DNA of 63,069 nucleotides, filler included, from Octopus bimaculoides (lineage: Eukaryota), in NCBI RefSeq assembly GCF_001194135.2. It is 3 parts of 3 records of this genome, joined end to end, with 100 filler letters (N's around TTAATTAATTAA, not from the genome) between each part and the next. Parts side by side here need not be neighbours in the genome. Positions count along the whole stretch, not along the records: positions 1 to 26,243 come from NC_068992.1; 2 more parts are not named here. One strand, written 5' to 3'. A model generated the notes under the pieces. That model saw nothing but the letters and a program-made list of their open reading frames with translations, was not told where the DNA came from and searched no databases. Positions 7,057-7,251 of this stretch are shown one piece after another. The position numbers were made by a program, and so were the translations under genes. How positions within the stretch are numbered: the first letter of the stretch is position 1; the number at the start of each line of letters is the position of its first letter.

Positions 7057-7251
7057 GGTAAATTTTCAGATTAACACCCGCGCGATTTTCACTTGGGTGT
7101 TAGGGTCAGGGTTAGGGTTTTAGGGTTACGGTTAGGGTTAGGGAATTCCGTCCCTAACCCTAAAACCCTAAACCTAACCCTAAACCCTAAACCTAACCCT
7201 AACCCTAACACCCTAGTGAAAATCGTGCGGGTGTTAATCTGAAAATTTACC
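7057..7251. mobile_element. 195-bp MITE-like hairpin element: 44-bp TIRs enclosing (TTAGGG)n-loop-(CCCTAA)n
   Basis: 7057-7100 and 7208-7251 are 42/44 identical inverted repeats starting GGTAA. Inner telomeric arrays converge on a 6-nt loop (7145-7150). Flanks AAAGAAAA and AAAAAAAA are a possible 8-bp TSD. Confidence 0.85.

What the first reader, a model, noticed from the sequence alone, without database searches (positions are those of the whole stretch)
7057..7251. Transposon that mimics a telomere-fusion scar: TIRs enclosing head-to-head TTAGGG arrays
Seen: the whole 195 bp is one hairpin, with 44-bp unique TIRs (42/44 identical), then (TTAGGG)-type repeats, a 6-nt loop and (CCCTAA)-type repeats. 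It sits inside the A-rich tail of a SINE, with a possible 8-bp TSD (AAAGAAAA/AAAAAAAA). Known: TTAGGG-then-CCCTAA is the classic signature of end-to-end chromosome fusion, and GGNRM termini with 8-9-bp TSDs characterise Merlin transposons. Inference: this is a mobile, telomere-repeat-carrying MITE that spreads fusion-like interstitial telomeric sites. These could form G-quadruplexes or cruciforms, bind telomere proteins, or act as breakage and healing seeds in a heavily rearranged genome.
Basis: partly seen in the sequence, partly recalled or inferred. Interest (0 to 1): 0.8.

Follow-up and report, generated by a model that had tools for sequence, protein, structure and literature searches.

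The report
Octopus mini-transposon filled with telomere repeats
The 195-base hairpin is a tiny, gene-less member of an octopus DNA-transposon family of the Merlin type, and its interior is made only of two inward-facing telomere-repeat arrays, so it looks like a chromosome-fusion scar but is not one.

Summary
Window 7057-7251 is a 195-bp near-perfect palindrome: outer arms 42/44 identical, about 7 TTAGGG-type units, an 8-nt centre, then about 9-10 CCCTAA-type units. It sits inside the 3' tail of a SINE.

It is a transposon. Its outer 38 nt recur, 86-89% identical and inverted, at both ends of a 3.1-kb foldback element in Octopus sinensis. That relative has a perfect 8-bp target duplication, and its arms carry pieces of a Merlin transposase gene. 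Termini starting GG plus 8-bp duplications fit Merlin. No transposase-bearing partner with this terminus was found.

That relative has no telomeric repeats, so a family that spreads telomeric sites is not shown.

A second element at the scaffold start (1-234) has inverted telomeric arrays of the opposite polarity. Its terminus is 78% identical to that of a transposase-encoding Merlin element.

I therefore think telomeric arrays replaced the interiors of Merlin-type elements, probably during break repair, and that the head-to-head layout simply mirrors the symmetry of the transposon ends. This last step is inferred.

A telomerase-RNA origin for the arms, a true fusion scar and an assembly artefact are rejected. 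G-quadruplex, cruciform, telomere-protein and breakpoint roles are untested.

The parts
6737..7056 (+). Host SINE copy (tRNA-like head, core, TG microsatellite, 3' part) up to the insertion point in its A-rich tail
   Evidence: Aligns with six other copies in the window at 76-82% identity (D17, 29, 64). The same SINE is 91% identical to a copy in O. sinensis locus L003.
7049..7056 (+). Left copy of the candidate 8-bp target-site duplication (AAAGAAAA)
   Evidence: Matches 7/8 with 7252-7259. Low-complexity sequence, P about 0.06-0.09. The family relative in L001 has a perfect 8-bp duplication AAAAAAAT.
7057..7094 (+). Left terminal inverted repeat, 38 nt, GGTAAATTTTCAGATTAACACCCGCGCGATTTTCACTT
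   Evidence: 86-89% identical to both termini of the L001 foldback element. Both differences from the right arm are derived changes in this arm.
7095..7143 (+). G-strand telomere-type array: GGGTG, then TTAGGG TCAGGG TTAGGG TTTTAGGG TTACGG TTAGGG TTAGGG
   Evidence: It contains a canonical G-quadruplex motif.
7144..7151 (.). Non-palindromic 8-nt centre AATTCCGT
7152..7213 (+). C-strand telomere-type array (9-10 units, including a 19-nt higher-order duplication), ending CACCC
7214..7251 (-). Right terminal inverted repeat, 38 nt
7252..7259 (+). Right copy of the candidate 8-bp target-site duplication (AAAAAAAA)
   Evidence: The SINE tail resumes at TGAAAGATAAAAC.
7260..7276 (+). Rest of the host SINE tail
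1..234 (.). Second element of the same design (E1). It comprises the inner 8 nt of a left terminal repeat cut by the scaffold start (1-8), (TAACCC)~6 (9-47), a 22-nt centre (48-69), (GGGTTA)~15 (70-159) and a 75-nt right terminal repeat (160-234). The telomeric arrays have the opposite polarity to 7057-7251.
   Evidence: The terminal repeat is 78% identical over 73 nt to the left terminus of a transposase-encoding Merlin element in O. sinensis locus L005.

Best explanation
Window 7057-7251 is a miniature, non-coding, foldback-type member of an octopus DNA-transposon family of the Merlin kind. The family has 38-bp terminal inverted repeats starting GG and inserts with an 8-bp target duplication into A-rich DNA, here the tail of an older SINE. 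Everything between the two terminal repeats has been replaced by telomere-type hexamer arrays. Because the two transposon ends are inverted copies of each other, whatever is attached to their inner edges is also inverted. The TTAGGG-then-CCCTAA layout therefore follows from transposon symmetry and not from end-to-end chromosome fusion. I infer that the arrays were made by the host's telomere machinery: telomerase, or repair synthesis templated on telomeric DNA. This would have happened when the interior of a longer element was lost, through abortive gap repair after excision or an internal break. The arrays would have been seeded by the TAGG(G) at the inner edge of each terminal repeat, and the two ends then joined with 8 nt of filler. 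What is shown: transposon identity, family membership across species, the target duplication, the link to Merlin sequences, and a second independent case in the same scaffold. What is inferred: how and when the arrays arose, and whether this 195-bp unit itself transposed or was cut down in place.
For: Palindrome and sharp ends. Insertion relative to six paralogous SINE tails. The same 38-nt terminus, inverted, lies at both ends of L001 161-3272 (O. sinensis chromosome CM016860.1). That element is 3112 bp, with 1437-bp arms 94.8% identical, 119-124-bp tandem subrepeats next to the termini, and a perfect 8-bp duplication AAAAAAAT. The L001 arms carry pieces of a Merlin element: 99 nt at 93%, 52 nt at 94% inside the transposase reading frame, and 36 nt at 100%. 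The transposase-bearing 8.7-kb octopus Merlin element starts GG and makes clean 8-bp duplications (GCAAATCT, CAAGGCTT); its product and the L005 element's both match PF12762. Literature definition of Merlin, and O. bimaculoides as the bilaterian richest in Merlin proteins: PMC8101967. For a host telomere process: the relative lacks arrays. A second element with an unrelated, Merlin-homologous terminus (window 1-234) also has its interior replaced by inverted telomeric arrays that start at the inner boundary of the terminal repeat. Telomeric hexamers are the only sizeable true hexamer arrays in the window. Variant units in the two arrays of 7057-7251 are not mirrored and the arrays differ in length. 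Insertion of telomeric repeats at double-strand breaks, occasionally head-to-head, is documented in vertebrates (PMC8537989).
Against: No octopus genome could be searched as a whole. Only one further family member was found in 154 kb, and that sample was chosen around Merlin genes. No autonomous element with this exact terminus was found, and the 38-mer shows no significant similarity to the termini of the three Merlin types examined. The window's own target duplication is 7/8 in a poly-A context. The irregular first unit GGGTG is present in both arms. In the second element the ATAGGG variant is mirrored. This fits arrays that were already part of a symmetric parent, or arm-to-arm conversion, better than two independent additions. 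The polarity of the second element (C-strand next to the terminal repeat) cannot be made by telomerase extending the broken transposon end, so it needs templated copying or capture.
Confidence: 0.6

Rival explanations
1. The telomeric arrays are an inherited part of the arms of a subfamily, like the tandem subrepeats of other foldback elements. The 195-bp unit arrived here by transposition as it is, so the family seeds fusion-like interstitial telomeric sites around the genome.
For: Foldback arms are normally built of tandem repeats that are mirrored in both arms, as in the L001 relative, which has mirrored 119-124-bp repeats and mirrored (TA)n arrays. The irregular first unit GGGTG is identical in both arms of the window element. 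Intact terminal repeats and a plausible 8-bp duplication are consistent with transposition of the small unit.
Against: The only relative found has no TTAGGG repeats at all. No second array-bearing copy was seen in 154 kb. An element with an unrelated terminus (window 1-234) has arrays too, which argues for repeated acquisition rather than descent.
Confidence: 0.25
2. The arrays grew by ordinary microsatellite slippage from a chance TAGGG-like seed in each arm, and their identity with the telomere motif is coincidence.
For: The arrays are degenerate, with single-base length variants and a 19-nt duplicated block typical of slippage. A seed-like TAGG lies at the inner edge of the terminal repeat.
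Against: Two elements with unrelated termini, 7 kb apart, both ended up with the host telomere hexamer. No other true hexamer array of comparable size exists in the window.
Confidence: 0.06
3. A one-off repair scar of the TERC-ITS kind. Both ends of a double-strand break in the SINE tail were extended on telomerase RNA, so the 44-nt arms are reverse-transcribed pieces of telomerase RNA followed by telomeric repeats, and the two ends were joined head-to-head.
For: In vertebrates, 25-98-bp telomerase-RNA fragments lie upstream of 6-205-bp arrays, and 3 of 41 such loci have head-to-head arrays (PMC8537989). The sizes here fit.
Against: The arm sequence is the terminus of a transposon found in another species with a target duplication. 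Both arms start at the same nucleotide, although the two break ends (A-run and T-run) could not share a priming site. No Rfam telomerase match was found. No cephalopod telomerase RNA is available for comparison.
Confidence: 0.03
4. A relic of a real telomere-to-telomere fusion or breakage-fusion-bridge event, or an assembly artefact such as a fold-back chimera.
For: TTAGGG followed by CCCTAA is the classical fusion signature. The scaffold is a short-read assembly with eight N gaps.
Against: The inverted repeat ends after 44 nt, and the flanks are collinear halves of one SINE tail and not inverted sequence. The arms differ by two substitutions and by array length and composition, which an artefactual copy would not show. 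The terminus is confirmed in an independent long-read-based assembly of another species.
Confidence: 0.02

Closest known systems
Non-autonomous Merlin (IS1016/IS1595-related) DNA transposons
   Same: Termini begin 5'-GG. An 8-bp target duplication is perfect in the O. sinensis relative and 7/8 here. There is no coding capacity. The relative carries fragments of a Merlin transposase gene and of its subterminal region. Octopus genomes are unusually rich in Merlin (PMC8101967).
   Different: No transposase-bearing element with this 38-nt terminus was found. The 38-mer is not significantly similar to the termini of the three octopus Merlin types seen here. The interior is made only of telomere-type repeats.
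Foldback (FB-type) transposons, e.g. Drosophila FB and Tetris (structural class; from my own knowledge and the reference list of PMC12692304)
   Same: Almost the whole element is an inverted repeat, with a unique terminal sequence followed by tandem subrepeats and a small non-palindromic centre. The 3.1-kb relative is a textbook case.
   Different: It is much smaller (195 bp). The subrepeats are the host's telomere hexamer. No sequence relationship to the Drosophila families was tested.
Fusion-type interstitial telomeric sites (e.g. human 2q13)
   Same: Head-to-head TTAGGG / CCCTAA arrays, degenerate in sequence.
   Different: The inverted symmetry stops 38-44 nt outside the arrays. The flanks are one continuous SINE tail, and the arrays are about 45-60 nt long.
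Short ITS and TERC-ITS inserted at double-strand breaks (Nergadze/Giulotto; PMC8537989, PMC2246262)
   Same: Short telomeric arrays that appear in one step at internal sites, sometimes inside SINEs, sometimes head-to-head, with a unique fragment upstream of the array. This is the likely source of the mechanism that made the arrays.
   Different: The unique fragment here is a transposon terminus and not telomerase RNA. It is present symmetrically on both sides, and a target duplication is likely.
Telomere-bearing elements of ciliates (Oxytricha TBE, Tetrahymena Tel-1)
   Same: Transposons that carry inverted telomeric repeats.
   Different: In ciliates the telomeric repeats are the outermost termini of Tc1/mariner-type elements. 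Here they are internal, and the terminal repeats are unrelated.

Membership tests
Merlin superfamily (non-autonomous member) | Terminal inverted repeats (24-462 bp) with conserved terminal 5'-GG (PMC8101967) | tested here: met
   Both arms start GGTAAATTTT, and the shared terminal repeat is 38 nt. The octopus Merlin termini examined also start GG.
Merlin superfamily (non-autonomous member) | 8- or 9-bp target-site duplication | tested here: met
   The relative L001 161-3272 has a perfect AAAAAAAT on both sides. The window copy matches 7/8 (8/9) in poly-A, which is weak on its own.
Merlin superfamily (non-autonomous member) | Mobilised by a DDE_Tnp_IS1595 transposase from an autonomous element with matching termini | tested here: inconclusive
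   No element with both the 38-mer and a transposase was found in 154 kb. However, the arms of the relative contain 36-99-nt pieces that are 93-100% identical to a PF12762-encoding element.
Foldback-type element (structural class) | Arms make up nearly the whole element: a unique terminus followed by tandem subrepeats, with a short unique centre | tested here: met
   Window element. Relative: arms of 1437 bp, 119-124-bp subrepeats.
MITE | Short, non-coding, with terminal repeats and a target duplication, present in many copies | tested here: inconclusive
   Short, non-coding and terminal repeats are met. Copy number is unknown: one other family member in 154 kb of octopus DNA and none in the rest of the window.
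Fusion-type interstitial telomeric site | Inverted arrays flanked by the subtelomeric sequences of two different ancestral chromosome ends | tested here: not met
   The flanks are the two parts of one SINE tail, and the inverted repeat ends at 7057 and 7251.
TERC-ITS (telomerase-RNA-templated break repair) | The unique fragment next to the array is derived from the species' telomerase RNA | tested here: not met
   The fragment is the terminus of a transposon with a target duplication in O. sinensis. No Rfam telomerase hit was found. A direct comparison is impossible because no cephalopod telomerase RNA is known in the sources read.
Ciliate telomere-bearing elements (TBE/Tel-1) | Telomeric repeats form the outermost ends of the element | tested here: not met
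   The arrays are internal to unique 38-nt termini.

The most novel reading that the evidence does not exclude
In octopus genomes the interiors of Merlin-type transposons are recurrently replaced by telomeric arrays. Telomerase or telomere-templated synthesis would heal the inward-facing ends left by excision or breakage. This would produce small palindromic elements that keep functional termini and can carry fusion-like interstitial telomeric sites to new places. Two elements with unrelated termini show this within one 26-kb scaffold, and a third inverted-repeat element with a telomere-like array lies near a Merlin copy in O. sinensis.
Probability: 0.3. Interest if true: 0.65.

Novelty: new variant of a known kind. 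Interest (0 to 1): 0.5.

Why it matters
Head-to-head telomeric arrays are routinely read as scars of chromosome fusion. Cephalopod genomes are discussed as heavily rearranged. This locus shows that the same signature can be produced on a 200-bp scale inside a transposon, so such sites must be checked for terminal repeats and target duplications before they are used as evidence of fusion. If the recurrent link between Merlin-type ends and telomeric arrays holds genome-wide, it would be a natural record of telomere machinery acting at transposon-induced breaks. It would also be a possible way for interstitial telomeric sites to be copied around a genome, an idea raised in reviews (PMC6410037) but poorly documented. 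The element is also a strong hairpin with G-quadruplex potential, a plausible fragile site, but that is untested.

Tried and rejected
1. Exact scans for the terminal repeat found nothing: metagenome contigs twice, viral contigs and prokaryote genome contigs. These collections hold no cephalopod DNA.

2. I translated the element in all frames and searched the protein collection. Only low-complexity hits came back.

3. Exact look-ups of window reading frames found none on record. The window has no credible genes, tRNAs or Rfam families.

4. Rfam at a permissive threshold gave only generic hairpin matches to miRNA precursor models, far below their gathering scores. There was no hammerhead or telomerase hit.

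5. I considered the telomerase-RNA idea for both palindromes seriously. It could not be tested directly, because no cephalopod telomerase RNA appears in PMC8480181 or elsewhere. It was then made very unlikely by finding the arm sequence as a transposon terminus.

6. A Penelope-like or retroelement origin (inverted twin 3' ends, PMC8557442) was rejected. There is no T-run on the left side and no ribozyme motif.

7. A possible link of the first palindrome to a SINE tail was rejected, because its flank is not SINE-derived.

8. Similarity between the non-telomeric parts of the two palindromes was not significant.

9. Similarity of the 38-mer to Merlin termini or to the L005 inverted-repeat element was not significant.

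11. Seven loci fetched from ENA assemblies turned out not to be octopus.

12. Literature searches found no prior description of telomere-repeat-bearing MITEs in molluscs.

Full report
**1. The observation**

Window 7057-7251 reads as follows:
- GGTAAATTTTCAGATTAACACCCGCGCGATTTTCACTTGGGTG;
- seven TTAGGG-type units (TTAGGG TCAGGG TTAGGG TTTTAGGG TTACGG TTAGGG TTAGGG);
- AATTCCGT;
- nine to ten CCCTAA-type units;
- the reverse complement of the first 44 nt, with two differences.

As single-stranded DNA it folds into one hairpin of -86.1 kcal/mol. Shuffled sequences give -23.2 +/- 3.4 (z = -18.8). The terminal 36-mer occurs only at these two places in the window, with none expected by chance.

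The two arrays are not exact mirror images. The right one is 13 nt longer, holds a 19-nt higher-order duplication, and its variant units do not sit at mirrored positions. These differences, plus the two substitutions in the arms, show a real and somewhat aged sequence, not an assembly fold-back.

**2. Context**

The piece is a short-read scaffold with eight N gaps and no credible genes, tRNAs or Rfam families. It is packed with microsatellites and with at least seven copies of one tRNA-derived SINE.

Aligning the SINE copies shows that the palindrome interrupts the A-rich 3' tail of the copy at about 6737-7276. With the 195 bp removed the tail reads through. None of the other six tails has the 13-A run that the two flanks make together.
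- The flanks AAAGAAAA and AAAAAAAA match 7/8 (AAAAGAAAA / AAAAAAAAA 8/9). In this base composition that has a chance probability of about 0.06-0.09.
- The host SINE is only 76-82% identical to its paralogues, whereas the two arms differ at 2 of 44 positions. The insertion is therefore much younger than the SINE.
- The inverted repeat ends exactly at GG...CC and the flanks are not complementary. A fusion or breakage-fusion-bridge relic is excluded.

**3. Reaching related sequence**

None of the DNA collections holds cephalopod DNA, and translated searches failed.

The way in came from the literature. A survey of Merlin transposons lists Octopus bimaculoides as the bilaterian with the most Merlin proteins (191), and its supplement gives their sequences (PMC8101967). 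Using one of them (KOF79200.1) as a query returned octopus Merlin proteins. Their genomic loci could then be fetched: 154 kb from O. sinensis, O. vulgaris and O. bimaculoides.

The window's SINE is 91% identical to a copy in O. sinensis locus L003. The window therefore comes from an octopus.

**4. The arm sequence is a transposon terminus**

In locus L001 (O. sinensis chromosome CM016860.1) the first 37-38 nt of the window's arms recur at 86-89% identity. They lie in inverted orientation at positions 161-198 and 3235-3272. They bound a 3112-bp element with these features:
- its two 1437-bp arms are 94.8% identical around a centre of about 250 bp;
- it has two to three 119-124-bp tandem subrepeats next to each terminus and mirrored (TA)n arrays;
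- it has no reading frame of note;
- it has a perfect 8-bp target duplication, AAAAAAAT.

This is a textbook foldback transposon. The four termini align over exactly 38 nt (GGTAAA[T/A]TT[T/A]CAGATTA[A/T]CACCC[G/C]C[A/G]CGATTTTCACT[A/T]). Homology then stops: the O. sinensis element continues with an A-run and its subrepeats, while the window element continues with GGGTG(TTAGGG)n. Both differences between the window's arms are derived changes in the left arm.

An nhmmer profile of the terminus finds no further copy in the 154 kb or elsewhere in the window. The family exists in at least two octopus genomes, but its copy number is unknown. One hit in 154 kb would extrapolate to thousands of copies, but the sample is small and was chosen around Merlin genes.

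**5. The link to Merlin**

Merlin elements are defined by terminal repeats of 24-462 bp beginning GG, 8-9-bp target duplications and a DDE_Tnp_IS1595 transposase (PMC8101967).

The transposase-bearing octopus elements in the fetched loci:
- An 8.7-kb element is present at 99% identity in L001, L002 and L003. It has about 350-bp terminal repeats that start GGCGATG / GGCATAG, and clean 8-bp duplications (GCAAATCT, CAAGGCTT).
- A 2.3-kb element in L005 has a 317-codon reading frame. Both encoded proteins match PF12762.

The foldback relative of the window element carries pieces of the L005/L013-type Merlin in both arms:
- 99 nt at 93% from its subterminal region;
- 36 nt at 100%;
- 52 nt at 94% from inside the transposase frame (coding ...SIRKGTFLENSKLKCQQI...).

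Together with the GG start and the 8-bp duplication, this makes Merlin the most likely superfamily. It is not proven. No element combines the 38-mer with a transposase, and the 38-mer is not significantly similar to the other Merlin termini.

**6. A second case in the same scaffold**

The scaffold begins with GTCGATCC (TAACCC)~6, a 22-nt non-palindromic centre, (GGGTTA)~15, then GGATCGAC and a GC-rich stretch ending at 234.

Positions 160-234 are 78% identical over 73 nt to the left terminus of the transposase-encoding Merlin element in L005, and similar to its right terminus. The outer end reads GGTGTACTAC.

So this too is a Merlin-type element whose interior has been replaced by inverted telomeric arrays. 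Its left terminal repeat is cut off by the scaffold edge. Its arrays have the opposite polarity, with the C-strand next to the terminal repeat. In both elements the arrays begin at the inner boundary of the terminal repeat. The two termini are unrelated.

In L005, 2 kb from the Merlin copy, a further inverted-repeat-bounded element (7149-7601) contains a one-sided, degenerate TTAGGG-like array.

Telomeric hexamers are the only sizeable true hexamer arrays in the window.

**7. How it most likely works**

Shown: the 195-bp unit is a member of a mobile family and lies in an insertion-type context.

Inferred: it is an internally deleted derivative, and its filler is of telomeric origin.
- The classical route to such derivatives is abortive gap repair after excision. 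The two ends re-copy the element inward from each terminus and are joined prematurely.
- If the inward-growing 3' ends are picked up by telomerase, or switch by microhomology to telomeric DNA, the result is terminal repeat, array, junction, inverted array, terminal repeat. Here the terminal repeat ends in CACTAGG, a telomeric seed.
- The inversion is forced by the symmetry of the transposon ends.
- Addition of telomeric repeats at internal breaks, in a few cases on both sides of the break, is documented in vertebrates (PMC8537989).

Weak points of this account:
- The irregular first unit GGGTG is present in both arms, and in the scaffold-start element an ATAGGG variant is mirrored. This suggests either a symmetric array-bearing parent or conversion between the arms.
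- The polarity of the scaffold-start element cannot come from direct telomerase extension.

Only a genome-wide census can decide between the two.

**8. Rejected explanations**

A telomerase-RNA origin of the arms looked attractive before the relative was found. The sizes and layout match TERC-ITS loci. It fails because the arm is a transposon terminus, and it needs both break ends to prime at the same nucleotide.

A retroelement twin insertion lacks the expected T-run and ribozyme motif. Fusion and artefact are excluded by the flanks, the arm differences and the independent assembly.

**9. Verdict**

- mobile element, yes;
- Merlin-type, probably;
- mimic of a fusion scar, yes;
- a family that spreads telomeric sites, and any telomere-related function, not shown.

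It is a new variant of a known kind, a foldback/MITE-type Merlin derivative whose interior is telomeric repeats. It is of moderate interest. Interest would rise if the recurrent association seen here in three places holds across the genome.

Noticed in passing
window 1-234: A second palindromic element at the very start of the scaffold: (TAACCC)~6, a 22-nt centre, (GGGTTA)~15, bounded by a 75-nt terminal repeat that is 78% identical to the terminus of a transposase-encoding Merlin element in O. sinensis. The left terminal repeat is cut off by the scaffold edge, and the array polarity is opposite to 7057-7251. The outer 23 nt of both arms, including an ATAGGG variant, are identical.
   Followed up: yes
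window 167-220: The terminal repeat of that element is 70% G+C with 10 CpG and forms a strong hairpin (GCGCGGAC...GTCCGCGC). The scaffold overall is 38% G+C with CpG observed/expected 0.63.
   Followed up: partly
L001 161-3272 (O. sinensis CM016860.1): A 3112-bp foldback element with 1437-bp arms, 119-124-bp subrepeats containing G-run/C-run mini-palindromes, mirrored (TA)n arrays and a perfect 8-bp duplication. Its arms contain rearranged fragments of a Merlin transposase gene and of its subterminal region. It lies 1 kb from an 8.7-kb Merlin element.
   Followed up: yes
L001 4265-12996, L003 4252-12997, L002 about 3886-12953: An 8.7-kb Merlin-bearing element with about 350-bp terminal repeats and clean 8-bp duplications. 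It is 98-99.6% identical between two O. sinensis chromosomes and an O. vulgaris chromosome, which suggests very recent activity or recent shared ancestry.
   Followed up: partly
L005 7149-7601 (O. sinensis VCDQ01004827.1): An inverted-repeat-bounded element of about 450 bp containing a degenerate, one-directional TTAGGG-like array (7400-7490, with TTTTAGGG, ATAGGG and TTTGAGGG variants), 2 kb upstream of a Merlin copy.
   Followed up: partly
window 5413-5513, 5934-6034, 6146-6246, 24639-24739: A second short interspersed repeat family, distinct from the main SINE. It is also present in O. bimaculoides locus L004 (77% identity).
   Followed up: no
window 7085-7226 and 2-121: Both telomeric hairpins give sub-threshold matches to several miRNA-precursor models in Rfam (best 44.9 and 54.5 bits, gathering scores 135 and 101.7). 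These are generic hairpin resemblance, not evidence of miRNA genes.
   Followed up: partly
window 7527-7603 and 15504-15806: Long compound trinucleotide arrays (TAA/ATG/TGG; AGT/GTT/TGG, the latter about 300 bp) that create long low-complexity reading frames. There are many di- and tetranucleotide arrays throughout, and several N gaps are flanked by (AT)n or (TA)n.
   Followed up: no
L009 5936-9196 (ENA assembly ERZ26222911, not octopus): Three tandem copies of a 104-residue DDE_Tnp_IS1595 fragment at a spacing of 1473 bp, next to a longer Merlin gene in an unidentified organism.
   Followed up: no
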